Below are positions 4,376 to 10,737 of a DNA stretch of 64,000 nucleotides, piece after piece. The notes below the pieces were generated by a model. It saw only the letters and a list, made by a program, of their open reading frames with translations. It was not told where the DNA came from and ran no database searches. Position 1 is the stretch's first letter. Every line of letters begins with the position of its first letter. Made by a program: the position numbers and the translations under genes. The stretch covers positions 205,134 to 269,133 of IMG/VR virus record IMGVR_UViG_3300042549_005931, one strand, 5' to 3'.

Positions 4376-4455
4376 CAAAAAGTGTCTTGGTATGCTCTGA
4401 CGAAAGTCAACGACAAGGTCTCGGTAGGCAGAACGCGTCTGATTCTACCCAAAAC

Positions 4456-4672: not shown

Positions 4673-4674
4673 TA

Positions 4675-4782
4675 AGGAGCTCCCGCTTTAAGGTGAAGGA
4701 CACGCGGGCGAATAACTTTCAGGGTAAGTTGTAAAAGAACTCGAAACCTTAAGTCTAGTGTGGGAGAGACTCCTACCCACAC
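4675..4782 (+). ncRNA. unassigned pseudoknotted structured RNA
   Basis: CCCGC/GCGGG, TTAAGG/CCTTAA, AACTT/AAGTT, GTGTGGG/CCCACAC, AGGAG/CTCCT. Confidence 0.5.
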
Positions 4783-4786
4783 ACAA

Positions 4787-4867: not shown

Positions 4868-4940
4868 GGGATTGAGGTCAAACGGTTAAGATGTCGCCCT
4901 GTCACGGCGCACGGAGCGGGTTCAACTCCCGTCAGTCCCG
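4868..4940 (+). tRNA. tRNA-Asp(GTC)
   Basis: Loop CTGTCAC. Confidence 0.93.
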
Positions 4941-4943
4941 CAT

Positions 4944-5014
4944 TCCTCTATGGTGTAACGGTAACACAACTGTTTTTGGTGCAGTTATTCATGGTTCGAA
5001 TCCATGTAGGGGGT
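4944..5014 (+). tRNA. tRNA-Gln(TTG)
   Basis: Stem ACTGT/GCAGT, loop TTTTGGT. Confidence 0.9.
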
Positions 5015-5017
5015 CAA

Positions 5018-5213
5018 TGAGTAAGAGATACTCAGCAGTCTTTAATCCAAGACTCATTTAAAAATGGATAGGATAATAGACTGGACATCCTTAAACGCCA
5101 GTCTCTTGGGAATAAAGCTGGAAAATCGTCCTTGCTCCCAGTAACGATTGACTTTTTAATGAGGGATGCCTCGCAGGTTTTTCAAACAGCTAAATAACCG
5201 AAATAACTACTCA
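5018..5213 (+). ncRNA. unassigned multi-pseudoknot RNA of about 195 nt
   Basis: Closing helix TGAGTA/TACTCA plus several hairpins whose loops have downstream complements. Confidence 0.55.
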
Positions 5214-5239
5214 CATATAATCTCAATGTGGGGAAACAA

Positions 5240-5321
5240 GGAGAGGTGGACAATGGTCGTTGAGCGGTCTTGAAAACCGTCGGGTGTAAAAGCTTTGCAG
5301 GTTCGAATCCTGTCCTCTCCG
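5240..5321 (+). tRNA. tRNA-Ser(TGA)
   Basis: Loop CTTGAAA, long variable arm. Confidence 0.92.
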
Positions 5322-5378
5322 CACCCTACAATCCCATGTCGGCTCGAGTGGGTGAGAGTATAGGTATCGGGCCCTTAT

Positions 5379-5679: not shown

Positions 5680-5831
5680 TGTAGTGTGACGAAATTGGCA
5701 GACGTACCCTCCTGTCTCGGGGGTGTGGAACAAGAAATAGATTGATAATATTAGGGGGTAGACCACCAGCTTGCAAGCGTCATGTTATCAGTTGAATCTC
5801 CACTTGAGTGGTTCGAATCCCTCCACTACAG
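5680..5831 (+). ncRNA. tRNA-like RNA with a ~80-nt variable arm and abnormal anticodon loop
   Basis: TGTAGTG/CACTACA acceptor, Leu-type D arm, ACCCTC/GGGGGT around loop CTGTCTC, GGTTCGAATCC T-loop. Confidence 0.75.
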
Positions 5832-5833
5832 CT

Positions 5834-6679
5834 ATGAAAATATTATTTATTAACGATTTCCAAGGTGTTGATTATTTAAATGATACCATATTTCACGGTG
5901 GACGAAGTCTATTTGGTGAAAATTTTGTAGAATCAAATGATGCTTGGTACATGTATGATGATATAACACCACACACCAAAAGTTCATTATATGGTATGGG
6001 GTTTACTATTGCAGGTAAATTAAATAGGATATCTATCGACACCACTAATATTCTTGAAAAAATTAAAGATAGGTTTTTTGATTTAATAATTTATGGTTCA
6101 GTTCATAGAAATATTTCTTATTTTGATGAAGTAATCAAATCATATAAATCAAATGAAATTGTTTTTTTAGATGGTGAAGATGAAACATATTTTAATGAAA
6201 AAATAATTGGATATGGGGTTTATTTTAAAAGAGAATTAATCAAAGAAAGAGAATGTGTTTTACCAATAAGTTTTAGTATTCCAAAAGAATTGATTAATAT
6301 TAATACATGTAAAGAAAAAGTTTTAGCAATGCCTTCATCTTATGAAACGGGATATATTTTTAATAAAGAAAATGATTATTATGAAGAATATAAAAAATCA
6401 TATTTTGCATTAACAAAAAAGAAAGGCGGATGGGATTGTTTAAGACATTATGAAATATTAATGAATGGTTGTTTACCATTGTTTCATAATTTACACGAAT
6501 TACCCAAAAATATAATGATTCATTGGGATAAAAATTTGTTACAAGAATGCCTCAATCTATTTTGGGAATTCAGATTAGATGAACAAAAATACATAAATTT
6601 AAAATCTCGAGTTGTTGATAATCTCCATAATAATTTAACAACTGAAAGTATGGTTAATTATATATTATCAAAATTATGA
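5834..6679 (+). CDS. glycosyltransferase-like protein
   Basis: Restarted at ATG5834 (MKILFI); KKGGWDCLRHYEILMNGCLP motif typical of phage GT-B-like proteins. Confidence 0.65.
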   Translation: MKILFINDFQGVDYLNDTIFHGGRSLFGENFVESNDAWYMYDDITPHTKSSLYGMGFTIAGKLNRISIDTTNILEKIKDRFFDLIIYGSVHRNISYFDEVIKSYKSNEIVFLDGEDETYFNEKIIGYGVYFKRELIKERECVLPISFSIPKELININTCKEKVLAMPSSYETGYIFNKENDYYEEYKKSYFALTKKKGGWDCLRHYEILMNGCLPLFHNLHELPKNIMIHWDKNLLQECLNLFWEFRLDEQKYINLKSRVVDNLHNNLTTESMVNYILSKL

Positions 6680-6733
6680 TAGGACACTACAGCTAAACCA
6701 TTAAAATATTAATTGATAAAATGAAAAAATAAA

Positions 6734-7699: not shown

Positions 7700-8470
7700 T
7701 ATCGGCGGTCTATAGTCGTTAAATAAACTACGAAAGTAGGATAAAGTGAATCGAAAGTTATAAACGGTTTGCGGTTTCGGTAACGGAACTCGAGTAGACA
7801 AGCAAGACATCATCTGTCCTTAGTTCCGAGGGTAACACTGTAGGAAATGGATAGGTGACTTGGCAATCTGAGTTGTCAAGTTGAGGTGGGAACACTAATA
7901 AGAGTAACTTGTGGAACTTTACAAGAAATGGGACCTCCAATCTCACTATTGTGTTGTTCAATATCATGGGTACCTTAAAATCGAAAGGTATGGTGAAGTA
8001 CGAGTGGTGTCGTTATCATCCTTAATAAAACCCTACCAAGAGTTTTATTTTGAAGGTGTCCAAAAGTATGGAGGTTGGGAGACTTCAGAGAGTAGTTTAG
8101 TATTCTGTTGTTCAAAAGATAATGGAGCTGGCAGACGGGCCACTACTTTCAAGATTCGGAAACAAAAAACCCTTACAATGGTGTAAATCAAAAAAAAGGA
8201 AAAGTGCTCGTCAGTCGTTGGAAACAGGTGACTACATAGTCGTGAGATGTTCACGGCCATAGAAGACCCCAAGTCCGATATGATTTTTGAGAAAAGTTCT
8301 ATATAGTGCGGCGGTATTGTATAGAGAAGAGTAACGAGAGAGTATTCAACGACTTAAGGATTGGTTAATCTAATTGACCGTCACTGATTGGTACAGTTCA
8401 AAAGACTGTGGATAAGAGAAGAATCAATAATGTCTCTAAAGTCAATCACAAAATGGTGTAATCTCAGCCA
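7700..8470 (+). ncRNA. giant structured ncRNA, probably GOLLD (ROOL as alternative)
   Basis: ~770 nt without a credible ORF, many hairpins and GNRA loops, own promoter and terminator, next to a phage tRNA array; assigned from recall, needs Infernal. Confidence 0.65.
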
Positions 8471-10335: not shown

Positions 10336-10737
10336 GGGGATGACCGGCATTTGACTGGCGTTTGTATTGTAAGTGGGCACGTAGTCAGACTTCATCTATG
10401 ACTTAAATAAACGGTGGAAACTTTTAGACGGCAACGTTTACAAAAACATGGAAATTGCGGGTATTCTTGCAACTTCTAACGTAGCAGTAGCCTAAGGCAA
10501 ACCTACAACGGGTCGACTGACATATAACCTAGGAACAGAAGTCTTCAAAGTGTGATACCACTCAGAGTGTCAAAGGTCTCGTTCAGAGTGCTACCTTAAG
10601 TGAACTCGACACAGTTATTGGTAACGATGTCAAAATAGGAACCAATTATTTGTCTATTGAGAACTAATAGAATAAACGTGTAGTCCATTTATTATTCGGC
10701 GGACAGGACCAGGGTTCGAATCCCTGCATCTCCACCA
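10336..10737 (+). ncRNA. ssrA: tmRNA; predicted tag (A)GNVYKNMEIAGILATSNVAVA
   Basis: GGGGATG/CATCTCC-ACCA with G3.U70 pair, T-arm GGTTCGAATCC, internal tag ORF 10430-10495. Confidence 0.93.

What the first reader, a model, noticed from the sequence alone, without database searches (positions are those of the whole stretch)
5018..5213. About 195-nt RNA with up to three pseudoknots between tRNA-Gln and tRNA-Ser
Seen: closing helix TGAGTA/TACTCA. Hairpin AGTCTT/AAGACT has loop ATCC matching GGAT (5066 or 5071). Hairpin AGACTGG/CCAGTCT has loop CATCC matching GGATG (5164-5168). Stem TGGGA/TCCCA encloses AATCGT, matching ACGATT (5144-5149). Every loop having a downstream partner is unlikely by chance. 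Inference: an undescribed ornate ncRNA.
Basis: partly seen in the sequence, partly recalled or inferred. Interest (0 to 1): 0.62.

Follow-up and report, generated by a model that had tools for sequence, protein, structure and literature searches.

The report
Ornate phage RNA between tRNA genes
A gene for an RNA of about 220 nt, wedged between two tRNA genes of an uncultivated freshwater jumbo phage, belongs to an uncatalogued family (at least 109 distinct copies in viral metagenome contigs) whose seven helices and three pseudoknots are kept by compensatory mutations, so it is a real, new structured RNA whose function is still unknown.

Summary
Comparative data confirm most of the fold and correct the rest.

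A covariance model built here finds about 150 copies in IMG/VR phage contigs: 109 are unique, and 95 differ from each other by more than 2.5%. None of them matches any Rfam 15 family. No copy was found in 50,697 GenBank phages, and no convincing copy in bacterial genomes.

Nested helices P1 to P7 pair in 91.2% of cells. 40 of 46 pairs show compensatory changes.

Three pseudoknots are supported by partner-permutation tests:
- PK1, P2 loop 5045-5049 with 5065-5069: z = 16.
- PK2', 5071-5074 with P3 loop 5087-5090: z = 10.
- PK3, 5124-5129 with 5144-5149: z = 9.

- The closing helix TGAGTA/TACTCA. Both strands sit in local hairpins, P1 and P7.
- CATCC with GGATG at 5164-5168.

The RNA runs from about 5016 to 5239 on the + strand. 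It starts 2-3 nt after one tRNA and ends just before the next, and the flanking tRNA identities differ between phages.

My best reading is a stable RNA excised from the tRNA-array transcript by tRNA-processing enzymes and acting in trans. Its function is unknown. It resembles GOLLD, ROOL and T4 rnaC/rnaD in lifestyle only.

The parts
5016..5239 (+). Whole predicted RNA: from just after tRNA-Gln to just before tRNA-Ser. The conserved, model-matching unit is 5015-5238.
   Evidence: CM R1 match 5015-5238, 223.6 bits. Homology to other contigs stops at these borders, where the flanking tRNAs differ. G.U pairs are frequent, for example U.G in 85 of 95 sequences at 5211:5231, which fixes the + strand.
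5018..5034 (+). P1 hairpin, TGAGTA/TACTCA, with loop AGAGA. The loop is nearly invariant.
   Evidence: 99.3% of cells paired. 3 of 6 pairs have double changes: CG at 5018:5034, GC and UA at 5020:5032, GC at 5022:5030.
5037..5054 (+). P2 hairpin, AGTCTT/AAGACT. Its loop is the 5' strand of PK1.
   Evidence: 95.4% paired. 4 of 6 pairs have compensatory change; for example 5039:5052 is UA 72, AU 15, GC 3.
5045..5069 (+). Pseudoknot PK1: ATCCA 5045-5049 pairs with TGGAT 5065-5069.
   Evidence: 91.0% paired. Pair types: 5048:5066 CG 59, AT 12, TA 11; 5046:5068 TA 49, AT 19, CG 9, TG 9. Partner permutation z = 16.2, 0 of 5000.
5071..5090 (+). Pseudoknot PK2': GGAT 5071-5074 pairs with ATCC 5087-5090 in the P3 loop.
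   Evidence: 91.7% paired. 5071:5090 is CG 37, GC 34, AT 13. Permutation z = 10.3, 0 of 5000. Many sequence solutions occur, including GGGT/ATCC, CGGT/ATCG, CCGC/GCGG, TAGC/GCTA, GTTGT/ACAAC and AGCTG/CAGCT.
5078..5104 (+). P3 hairpin, AGACTGG/CCAGTCT, with a 13-nt loop. Some relatives carry an insertion of about 50 nt in this loop.
   Evidence: All 7 pairs show compensatory changes; for example 5081:5101 is GC 33, CG 32, UA 10. Variants are listed.
5107..5140 (+). P4 (TGGG/CCCA) plus P4a (AGC/GCT and GG/CC), with a conserved internal loop AATAA(A).
   Evidence: 5108:5139 is GC 58, UA 14, CG 11, AU 9, the top mutual-information pair. 5118:5134 is GC 61, CG 20, AU 8. The inner GG/CC pairs are weak, at 43.5%.
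5124..5149 (+). Pseudoknot PK3: AATCGT 5124-5129 in the P4a loop pairs with ACGATT 5144-5149.
   Evidence: Permutation z = 9.0, 0 of 5000. At least 12 different complementary solutions occur, including AATCAT/ATGGTT, CGACAC/GTGTTG, TGGCAT/ATGCTG, TCACA/TGTGA and AATCCT/AGGATT. Column-wise pairing is 79.9% despite alignment shifts.
5161..5172 (+). P5 hairpin, GAGG/CCTC. The loop occurs in two family-wide states, GGATGC and GTAAGA.
   Evidence: 5162:5171 is GC 49, AU 17, UA 17, CG 6. The loop state co-varies with 5206 in J6/7; this is unexplained.
5174..5200 (+). P6 helix: C5174-G5200, GGTT/AACC and TTT/AAA, with a bulged T5195. Some relatives replace it with a longer insert.
   Evidence: 5174:5200 is CG 66, AT 12. 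5178:5197 is UA 60, GC 21.
5210..5232 (+). P7 hairpin, CTCACAT/ATGTGGG, with conserved loop AATCTCA. ATCTC 5220-5224 is complementary to GAGAT 5025-5029 in the P1 loop.
   Evidence: 96.0% paired, and all 7 pairs have compensatory change. The loop-loop complementarity holds in 99.8% of cells, but the only changes are 7 one-sided wobble changes, so the kissing contact is inferred.
4944..5015 (+). Upstream tRNA-Gln(UUG). Its 3' end lies 2-3 nt before P1.
   Evidence: ARAGORN and Rfam.
5240..5322 (+). Downstream tRNA-Ser(UGA). Its 5' end lies 7 nt after P7.
   Evidence: ARAGORN and Rfam.

Best explanation
Window 5016-5239 (+) encodes a member of a previously uncatalogued family of structured non-coding RNAs of about 215 nt, carried by uncultivated freshwater phages, many of them jumbo phages of 200-465 kb.

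Shown here:
- The RNA folds into seven helices, P1 to P7.
- It has three pseudoknots. Two consecutive H-type knots form a 5' domain: the P2 loop with 5065-5069, and 5071-5074 with the P3 loop. A third knot ties the P4a loop to 5144-5149.
- All of these are maintained by compensatory evolution.

Inferred:
- The gene has no promoter or terminator of its own and is transcribed as part of the phage tRNA array.
- It starts 2-3 nt after one tRNA and ends a few nt before the next, so host tRNA-processing enzymes release it. RNase P would cut at the 5' end of the downstream tRNA. RNase Z/BN or RNase E plus trimming would act at the 3' end of the upstream tRNA. I put this at about 0.7.
- The invariant, mutually complementary loops of the terminal hairpins P1 (GAGAU) and P7 (AUCUC) close the molecule by a kissing contact, or join molecules to each other. 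I put this at about 0.5.
- The mature RNA acts in trans as a compact scaffold that binds a protein or RNA partner connected with tRNA or translation takeover, or with counter-defence. It would be made in step with the phage tRNAs. I put this at about 0.35, and the partner is unknown.
For: - Family and structure: CM R1 finds about 150 copies in fetched IMG/VR loci. Of these, 143 are full length, 109 are unique and 95 are below 97.5% identity to each other.
- Nested structure: 91.2% of cells paired; 40 of 46 pairs have double changes; covariation score 0.359 against at most 0.092 for slid controls; 0 of 500 shuffles reach it.
- Pseudoknots: partner-permutation z = 16.2, 10.3 and 9.0; mutual information; column tables.
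- Strand: abundant G.U pairs that would be A.C on the other strand.
- Not coding: 1-nt indels in J1/2 shift the only short ORF (alignments).
- tRNA-array context: 72 of 143 copies have a same-strand tRNA ending within 15 nt upstream, and 84 of 143 have one starting within 15 nt downstream. At least 14 different tRNA identities occur on each side, with a median of 9 same-strand tRNAs per locus.
- No sigma-70-like promoter lies directly upstream, and no terminator follows P7.
- Single copy in the own genome and in 4 near-complete genomes.
- Habitat: lake and freshwater metagenomes from 17 studies.
- RNA libraries: freshwater metatranscriptome contigs cover the element or close relatives. X17 has depth 363 at 5029-5109, X16 has a 211-nt contig on 5093-5238 and X20 has a 242-nt contig on 4974-5069. 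The ORF at 5839-6700 is uncovered in those runs.
Against: - No direct evidence of transcription ends, stability or processing. The RNA-library data are assembled contigs at >= 88% identity, partly from relatives, and cannot show ends or exclude DNA carry-over.
- About 40-50% of copies lack an ARAGORN-called tRNA directly on one side, so tRNA-dependent processing cannot be the only route, unless those gaps hold unrecognised tRNA-like genes.
- The P1-P7 loop contact rests on conservation, complementarity and 7 wobble-compatible single changes. No double compensatory change was seen.
- Single-sequence thermodynamics give no signal, z = -0.98.
- Nothing here identifies a partner or a phenotype.
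Confidence: 0.6

Rival explanations
1. It is a cis-acting element of the tRNA operon, such as a processing platform, insulator, attenuator or terminator between tRNAs, rather than a stable trans-acting RNA.
For: - It lies inside the array, immediately flanked by tRNAs on the same strand.
- P5 followed by a U-rich stretch scores as terminator-like.
Against: - One copy per genome against 9-26 tRNAs per locus, so most tRNA junctions do without it.
- About 215 nt, three pseudoknots and invariant loops are far more than processing signals need.
- The U-run after P5 is the covarying 5' strand of P6, and conserved structure (P6, P7) plus a tRNA follow it.
Confidence: 0.15
2. It is a catalytic RNA: a new self-cleaving or otherwise catalytic ribozyme with a pseudoknotted core.
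For: A double-pseudoknot 5' domain and strictly conserved unpaired nucleotides (AAUAAAG, CCCAGUA, UUGAC, and the loops of P1, P5 and P7) resemble ribozyme cores.
Against: - No match to any ribozyme model in Rfam 15 at E <= 10.
- The ends can be made by tRNA enzymes without self-cleavage.
- No conserved candidate cleavage site was identified.
Confidence: 0.1
3. It self-assembles into RNA-only multimers, as GOLLD and ROOL do, through intermolecular P1-loop:P7-loop kissing.
For: - The two terminal loops are almost invariant and complementary, at 99.8%.
- The genomic niche matches that of GOLLD and ROOL, which form homo-oligomeric cages held by a few contacts (PMC12286853).
- GOLLD is present in the same window and in 3 of 10 element-bearing genomes.
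Against: - The RNA is several-fold smaller than GOLLD or ROOL.
- The same complementarity can be satisfied within one molecule.
- No structural data exist.
Confidence: 0.15
4. It is a degenerate or expanded tRNA, or a tRNA mimic occupying a tRNA slot.
For: - It occupies a slot in the array between tRNAs.
- Other odd tRNA-like genes occur nearby, for example 5681-5833.
Against: - No cloverleaf, no T-loop and no acceptor pairing. The 5'/3' closing helix is not supported.
- ARAGORN and the Rfam tRNA, tRNA-Sec, tmRNA and tRNA-like models are silent on it.
Confidence: 0.04
5. It is chance self-complementarity in an AT-rich spacer, not a functional RNA.
For: The MFE z-score is only -0.98, and the centroid holds few pairs. 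Matches of 4-6 nt are common by chance.
Against: About 150 homologues exist, with compensatory changes in 40 of 46 nested pairs and in three pseudoknots.
Confidence: 0.01

Closest known systems
GOLLD RNA (RF02032) and ROOL RNA
   Same: - Ornate, multi-pseudoknotted RNAs of unknown function, encoded by phages or prophages, often in or near tRNA islands (PMC12286853).
- GOLLD comes from lakes, and one copy lies 2.85 kb downstream in this window.
   Different: - No sequence or structure similarity. R1 hits the window only once, and the GOLLD and ROOL models do not hit the element.
- The element is 3-4 times smaller.
- GOLLD is absent from 7 of 10 large genomes that carry the element.
Phage T4 stable RNAs, species 1 and 2 (rnaC, rnaD)
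   Same: They are small stable RNAs encoded inside the phage tRNA cluster, abutting a tRNA. rnaD starts 1 nt after tRNA-Arg. To my knowledge they are co-processed with the tRNAs and their function is still unknown.
   Different: - They are 139 and 119 nt.
- R1 with filters off gives no match at either gene, with a best score of 5.9 bits elsewhere in the locus.
- rnaC carries a tRNA-like T-arm, which this RNA lacks.
freshwater-1 RNA motif (RF02979)
   Same: A small RNA motif from freshwater metagenomes. A sub-threshold copy (61.9 bits, gathering score 72) sits in the tRNA array of a family member's locus, L177.
   Different: It is a simple 62-nt motif with an unrelated sequence, and it does not overlap the element.
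Anonymous candidate structured RNAs from IMG/VR (Fremin et al. 2023, PMC10690425)
   Same: That catalogue holds 8,495 covariation-supported candidates mined from the same IMG/VR collection, some near tRNAs or tRNA-like.
   Different: The text names no motif with this architecture or context. The supplementary tables are not held, so overlap could not be checked.

Membership tests
Any Rfam 15 family (4227 models) | Covariance-model score at or above the family's gathering score, or at least a significant E-value | tested here: not met
   - There is no gathering-level match in 5016-5239.
- At E <= 10 only noise appears: mir-7132 at 14 bits and HOTAIR_2 at 12.9 bits.
- No overlapping match appears in 15 other family members.
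GOLLD RNA | Match to RF02032 (conserved 3' domain), or forming one unit with it | tested here: not met
   - GOLLD matches 8088-8470, 2.85 kb away, with ORFs and two tRNAs between.
- The element is found without GOLLD in 7 of 10 large genomes. The positive control for that search worked.
tRNA / tRNA-like RNAs (tRNA, tRNA-Sec, tmRNA, YrlA, skipping-rope and others) | Cloverleaf or L-shape hallmarks: acceptor pairing of the 5' and 3' ends, and a T-arm with a T-loop | tested here: not met
   - ARAGORN and the Rfam models do not call it.
- The 5'/3' closing helix is contradicted by the informative substitutions.
- There is no GTTCRANYC-type T-loop in the sequence.
T4-type stable RNAs of the tRNA cluster (rnaC/rnaD) | Encoded within the phage tRNA cluster, directly next to tRNAs on the same strand | tested here: met
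   A tRNA lies within 15 nt in 72 of 143 copies upstream and 84 of 143 downstream. The T4 layout is shown.
T4-type stable RNAs of the tRNA cluster (rnaC/rnaD) | Sequence or structure homology to rnaC or rnaD | tested here: not met
   R1 with filters off over the T4 tRNA region gives nothing at rnaC or rnaD. The best score is 5.9 bits, elsewhere in the locus.
T4-type stable RNAs of the tRNA cluster (rnaC/rnaD) | Accumulates as a discrete stable RNA processed out of the tRNA precursor | not testable with these tools
   Only assembled contigs from RNA libraries are available. They show presence, not ends or stability.
Known self-cleaving ribozymes (HDV-like, glmS, twister, hatchet, pistol, hammerhead, hairpin) | Match to the class model | tested here: not met
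   No Rfam ribozyme model matches at E <= 10.
Known self-cleaving ribozymes (HDV-like, glmS, twister, hatchet, pistol, hammerhead, hairpin) | Site-specific self-cleavage | not testable with these tools
   Self-cleavage needs an in-vitro assay, which these tools cannot provide.
IMG/VR csRNA catalogue (Fremin 2023) | Listed among the 8,495 DNAVirus_* models | not testable with these tools
   The supplementary files are not held.

The most novel reading that the evidence does not exclude
The RNA is a new class of self-organising phage RNA. Its invariant, mutually complementary terminal loops, P1 (GAGAU) and P7 (AUCUC), would link copies head to tail into RNA-only rings or cages. Alternatively its doubly pseudoknotted core is catalytic. 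Either reading would give jumbo phages a third, much smaller 'ornate RNA machine' beside GOLLD and ROOL, made stoichiometrically with their tRNAs.
Probability: 0.2. Interest if true: 0.9.

Novelty: categorically new. Interest (0 to 1): 0.74.

Why it matters
Ornate bacterial and phage RNAs are rare. They have repeatedly led to new biology: riboswitches, ribozymes, and most recently the RNA-only nanocages of GOLLD and ROOL.

This family has several useful properties:
- It is abundant in freshwater phage contigs and supported by strong covariation.
- It is compact enough (about 215 nt, three pseudoknots) for chemical probing, crystallography or cryo-EM.
- It sits in phage tRNA arrays, which are currently discussed as tools for codon adaptation and for countering tRNA-targeting host defences.
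- The same arrays hold at least two further conserved non-tRNA spacers. Phage tRNA arrays may therefore be a general reservoir of undiscovered small RNAs, in the manner of T4 rnaC and rnaD, whose function is still unknown after decades.

As a new RNA family it fits no catalogued class. Its lifestyle (tRNA-array-embedded, function unknown) does have precedents.

Tried and rejected
1. It is pairable in 96.7% of cells only because both sides are conserved. Nearly every informative change keeps local P1 or P7 and breaks this helix; none favours it.
2. It pairs in 60.3% of cells, with z = 2.7. Relatives with the same P3 loop carry a GTAAGA loop in P5, and relatives with the GGATGC loop lack CATCC in the P3 loop.
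3. PK1 with GGAT at 5071. It pairs in 42.6% of cells.
4. Part of GOLLD, or its 5' domain. Rejected.
5. Homology to T4 rnaC or rnaD. None was found.
6. Copies in cultured phages. blastn of two family members against 50,697 GenBank phages found nothing. The model finds nothing in Xanthomonas phages XacN1 and Xoo-sp13 or in Stenotrophomonas phage CM1, which share one of the window's glycosyltransferase genes at about 50% amino-acid identity.
7. Copies in bacterial genomes. The pattern scan of genome contigs gave 21 hits. My own estimate is that about 23 are expected by chance: 20 fixed bases, 21 gap lengths, 596 Gb, two strands. None scores above 17 bits with R1. This scan was limited to one exact pattern, so it is not proof of absence.
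8. A small ORF, ATG 5017 to TAA 5061. The frame and length are not conserved because of 1-nt indels.
9. An intrinsic terminator at P5. Rejected because P6, P7 and a tRNA follow it and the U-run is a covarying helix strand.
10. An alternative pairing between the similar P2 and P3 stems (AGUCU/AGACU repeats). It is not conserved in relatives.
11. P5-loop pairing with J6/7. AGA/UCU is possible only in the GTAAGA state. This remains unexplained.
12. Supplementary tables of PMC10690425. They are not available.

Not used: the large protein searches, structure prediction and any alternative genetic code, none of which was needed.

Full report
**Setting.** The window is the last 64 kb of a 269-kb IMG/VR virus record, estimated 81% complete. 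Its first 5.5 kb is a tRNA array on the + strand. ARAGORN tRNAs there, and Rfam adds a tRNA at 4868-4940. The array is followed by a GOLLD RNA at 8088-8470 (280 bits) and a tmRNA at 10336-10737. The finding lies in the 224-nt gap between tRNA-Gln (4944-5015) and tRNA-Ser (5240-5322). Near-identical DNA occurs in lake and freshwater metagenomes from 17 studies.

**Observation.** On this sequence alone the case is weak. The MFE z-score is -0.98 on the + strand and -1.33 on the - strand. A crude count of perfect hairpins whose loops have a downstream complement is reached by only 8 of 2000 dinucleotide shuffles. That count is inflated by the repeated AGUCU/AGACU words shared by P2 and P3. No Rfam 15 family matches at gathering level, and only noise appears at E <= 10.

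**Homologues.**
- An exact 27-mer from the second hairpin recurs in three other IMG/VR contigs. These align over window 5025-5236 at 78-85% identity, while their flanking tRNAs differ.
- A gapped pattern across P4 retrieved 49 loci.
- A covariance model built from 37 sequences with a hand-drawn nested structure (R1) finds about 150 matches of 54-226 bits in the fetched IMG/VR loci. Of these, 143 are full length, 109 are unique and 95 remain after removing pairs at or above 97.5% identity (alignment A3).
- The 21 hits of the same pattern in 596 Gb of bacterial and archaeal genomes match my own chance estimate of about 23. None scores above 17 bits with R1.
- No GenBank phage has a blastn-detectable copy. 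R1 finds none in three cultured jumbo phages that share a glycosyltransferase gene with the window.

**Nested structure.** On A3 the 46 nested pairs form standard pairs in 91.2% of 4142 cells, against 75.8% when partners are shuffled. Forty pairs have changes on both sides. The covariation score is 0.359, against 0.039-0.092 when partners are slid by 1-3 columns, and no shuffle out of 500 reaches any measure. The helices in window coordinates are:
- P1: 5018-5023 with 5029-5034.
- P2: 5037-5042 with 5049-5054.
- P3: 5078-5084 with 5098-5104.
- P4: 5107-5110 with 5137-5140.
- P4a: 5116-5118 with 5134-5136.
- P5: 5161-5164 with 5169-5172.
- P6: 5174 and 5176-5182 with 5192-5200.
- P7: 5210-5216 with 5226-5232.

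Frequent G.U pairs, such as U.G in 85 of 95 sequences at 5211:5231, place the RNA on the + strand, the strand of the tRNAs.

**Pseudoknots.** I tested loop-partner complementarity without relying on the alignment. I scored the best duplex between each sequence's own two segments and compared it with randomly re-paired segments from other family members.
- PK1, P2 loop with J2/3: own 5.55, permuted 4.21, z = 16.2.
- PK2', the end of J2/3 with the start of the P3 loop: 4.05 against 3.14, z = 10.3.
- PK3, P4a loop with the start of J4/5: 4.70 against 3.97, z = 9.0.
- Each of these was reached by 0 of 5000 permutations, and four unrelated segment pairings gave |z| <= 0.4.

Mutual information with APC correction independently ranks 5071:5090 (CG 37, GC 34, AT 13) and the four PK1 pairs among the top pairs. 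Column tables give 91.0% pairing for PK1 and 91.7% for PK2'. Each knot is realised by many different sequences. Examples are GAAUCA/UGAUUC, GGUCUA/UAGACC and UUGCCAA/UUGGUAG for PK1, and CGACAC/GUGUUG and UGGCAU/AUGCUG for PK3.

Where lineages changed P1 or P7, the change is almost always compensated locally and breaks the long-range helix. Examples are C-G at 5018:5034, G-C at 5020:5032 and 5022:5030, and 5212 C>U with 5230 G>A in 9 sequences. No change favours the long-range helix.
- The P3-loop CATCC does not track GGATG at 5164-5168. Pairing is 60.3% with z = 2.7. The P5 loop exists as GGATGC or GTAAGA whatever the P3 loop is.

**Further features.**
- The P1 loop (AGAGA plus U) and the P7 loop (AAUCUCA) are almost invariant. 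GAGAU 5025-5029 is complementary to AUCUC 5220-5224 in 99.8% of cells. The only changes are 7 one-sided wobble-compatible ones, so a kissing contact is inferred, not shown.
- The P5 loop state co-varies with J6/7: 5169:5206 is C/A in 46 sequences and A/U in 45. I cannot explain this by simple pairing.
- Some relatives carry an extra hairpin of about 50 nt in the P3 loop, or a longer insert in place of P6. This marks those elements as peripheral.

**Context and mechanism.**
- Of 143 copies, 72 have a same-strand tRNA ending within 15 nt upstream, and 84 have one starting within 15 nt downstream.
- The neighbours include at least 14 tRNA identities on each side, and the loci hold a median of 9 same-strand tRNAs. 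The element is therefore a cassette of tRNA arrays, not an appendage of one tRNA.
- It is single-copy in five large genomes.
- GOLLD accompanies it in only 3 of 10 large records, and the positive control for that search worked.
- No promoter-like site directly precedes it, and no terminator follows P7.

The simplest mechanism, which is inference, has three steps:
1. Transcription within the array.
2. Release by RNase P on the 3' side and by tRNA 3'-end processing on the 5' side.
3. Folding into a compact knotted RNA that acts in trans.

Assembled contigs from freshwater RNA libraries cover the element or close relatives. X17 has depth 363 at 5029-5109, and there are short contigs of 196-242 nt. 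The neighbouring ORF at 5839-6700 is uncovered. This agrees with expression, but contigs cannot show ends, strand or abundance.

**Comparison with known systems.**
- In lifestyle it resembles GOLLD and ROOL, ornate phage RNAs near tRNA islands (PMC12286853).
- It most closely resembles the T4 stable RNAs rnaC and rnaD, which abut tRNA-Arg in the T4 tRNA cluster.
- It is not homologous to any of them.
- A catalogue of 8,495 anonymous IMG/VR candidates exists (PMC10690425), but its tables are not held, so overlap cannot be excluded.
- Other papers retrieved describe unrelated RNAs.

**Verdict.** This is a real, widespread and apparently undescribed structured RNA family. The function remains unknown.

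**Constraints.** The one read-laying run used 2,401 letters. No alternative genetic code and no large protein search were used.

Noticed in passing
window 4377-4455 (+): The 79-nt spacer between tRNA-Met and tRNA-Val is conserved at 82-92% identity in 17 hits (11 unique) from other phage tRNA arrays. It folds into two hairpins with compensatory changes (GUCUUGG/ACAAGG versus GUCUCGG/ACGAGG; GGUAG/CUACC versus GGUGG/CCACC versus GUCUG/CAGAC) and has an invariant loop CUCUGACGAAAGUCAAC. There is no Rfam or ARAGORN match. It is probably a second undescribed small RNA of these arrays.
   Followed up: partly
window 5681-5833 (+): A tRNA-like gene of about 150 nt, with acceptor-like ends (GUAGUG...CACUAC), a GGUUCGAAUCC T-loop, an anticodon-arm-like hairpin and a long hairpin of about 70 nt inserted before the T-arm. 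It is conserved in L240, L021 and L097. ARAGORN (with introns allowed) and Rfam do not call it. A 77-nt contig of very high depth (about 6500) in RNA run X17 lies on 5702-5780. This also means the real start of ORF 5771-6679 is probably the ATG near 5834.
   Followed up: partly
window 4673-4786 (+): The 114-nt spacer between the two tRNA-Gly genes is conserved in L036, L097, L021, L206 and L176, at 72-100% identity. RNAalifold predicts hairpins. With only 4 unique sequences, the structure cannot be judged.
   Followed up: partly
window 8088-8470 (+), probably extending upstream to about 7600: A full match to the GOLLD RNA model (280 bits) lies 2.85 kb downstream of the finding. The ORF-poor stretch upstream of it may hold the variable GOLLD 5' domain. 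GOLLD is also present in 2 of 9 other large phage records that carry the new RNA.
   Followed up: partly
window 10336-10737 (+): A phage-encoded tmRNA, with tag peptide GNVYKNMEIAGILATSNVAVA. A related contig (L216) has a tmRNA 212 nt upstream of its copy of the new RNA.
   Followed up: no
window 4868-4940 (+): A tRNA (Rfam, 50 bits) that ARAGORN does not report. By eye its anticodon loop reads GUC (Asp).
   Followed up: no
window 5164-5169 and 5203-5208: The P5 loop exists in two family-wide states, GGAUGC and GUAAGA. These co-vary almost perfectly with J6/7: (A/G)AC versus UCU, with 5169:5206 as C/A in 46 sequences and A/U in 45. Only the GUAAGA state can pair (AGA/UCU). This could be a tertiary contact, a protein site, or linkage by descent.
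   Followed up: partly
L177 996-1056 (+): A sub-threshold match to the freshwater-1 RNA motif (RF02979, 61.9 bits, gathering score 72) lies inside the tRNA array of a phage contig that also carries the new RNA.
   Followed up: no
L222 4571-4648 (+): ARAGORN calls a suppressor-type tRNA with anticodon UUA ('tRNA-Stop') in the array of a related phage contig. This hints at stop-codon recoding in that phage.
   Followed up: no
L046 1017-1158 (-): A partial group I intron match (RF00028, 34 bits, cut by the locus end) lies next to the tRNA array of a related contig.
   Followed up: no
many loci, gaps of about 150-290 nt beside the element: Where no tRNA directly abuts the element, the nearest tRNA often lies at recurring distances (about 196-212 nt and 266-288 nt). 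This suggests further unrecognised RNA genes in these arrays.
   Followed up: no
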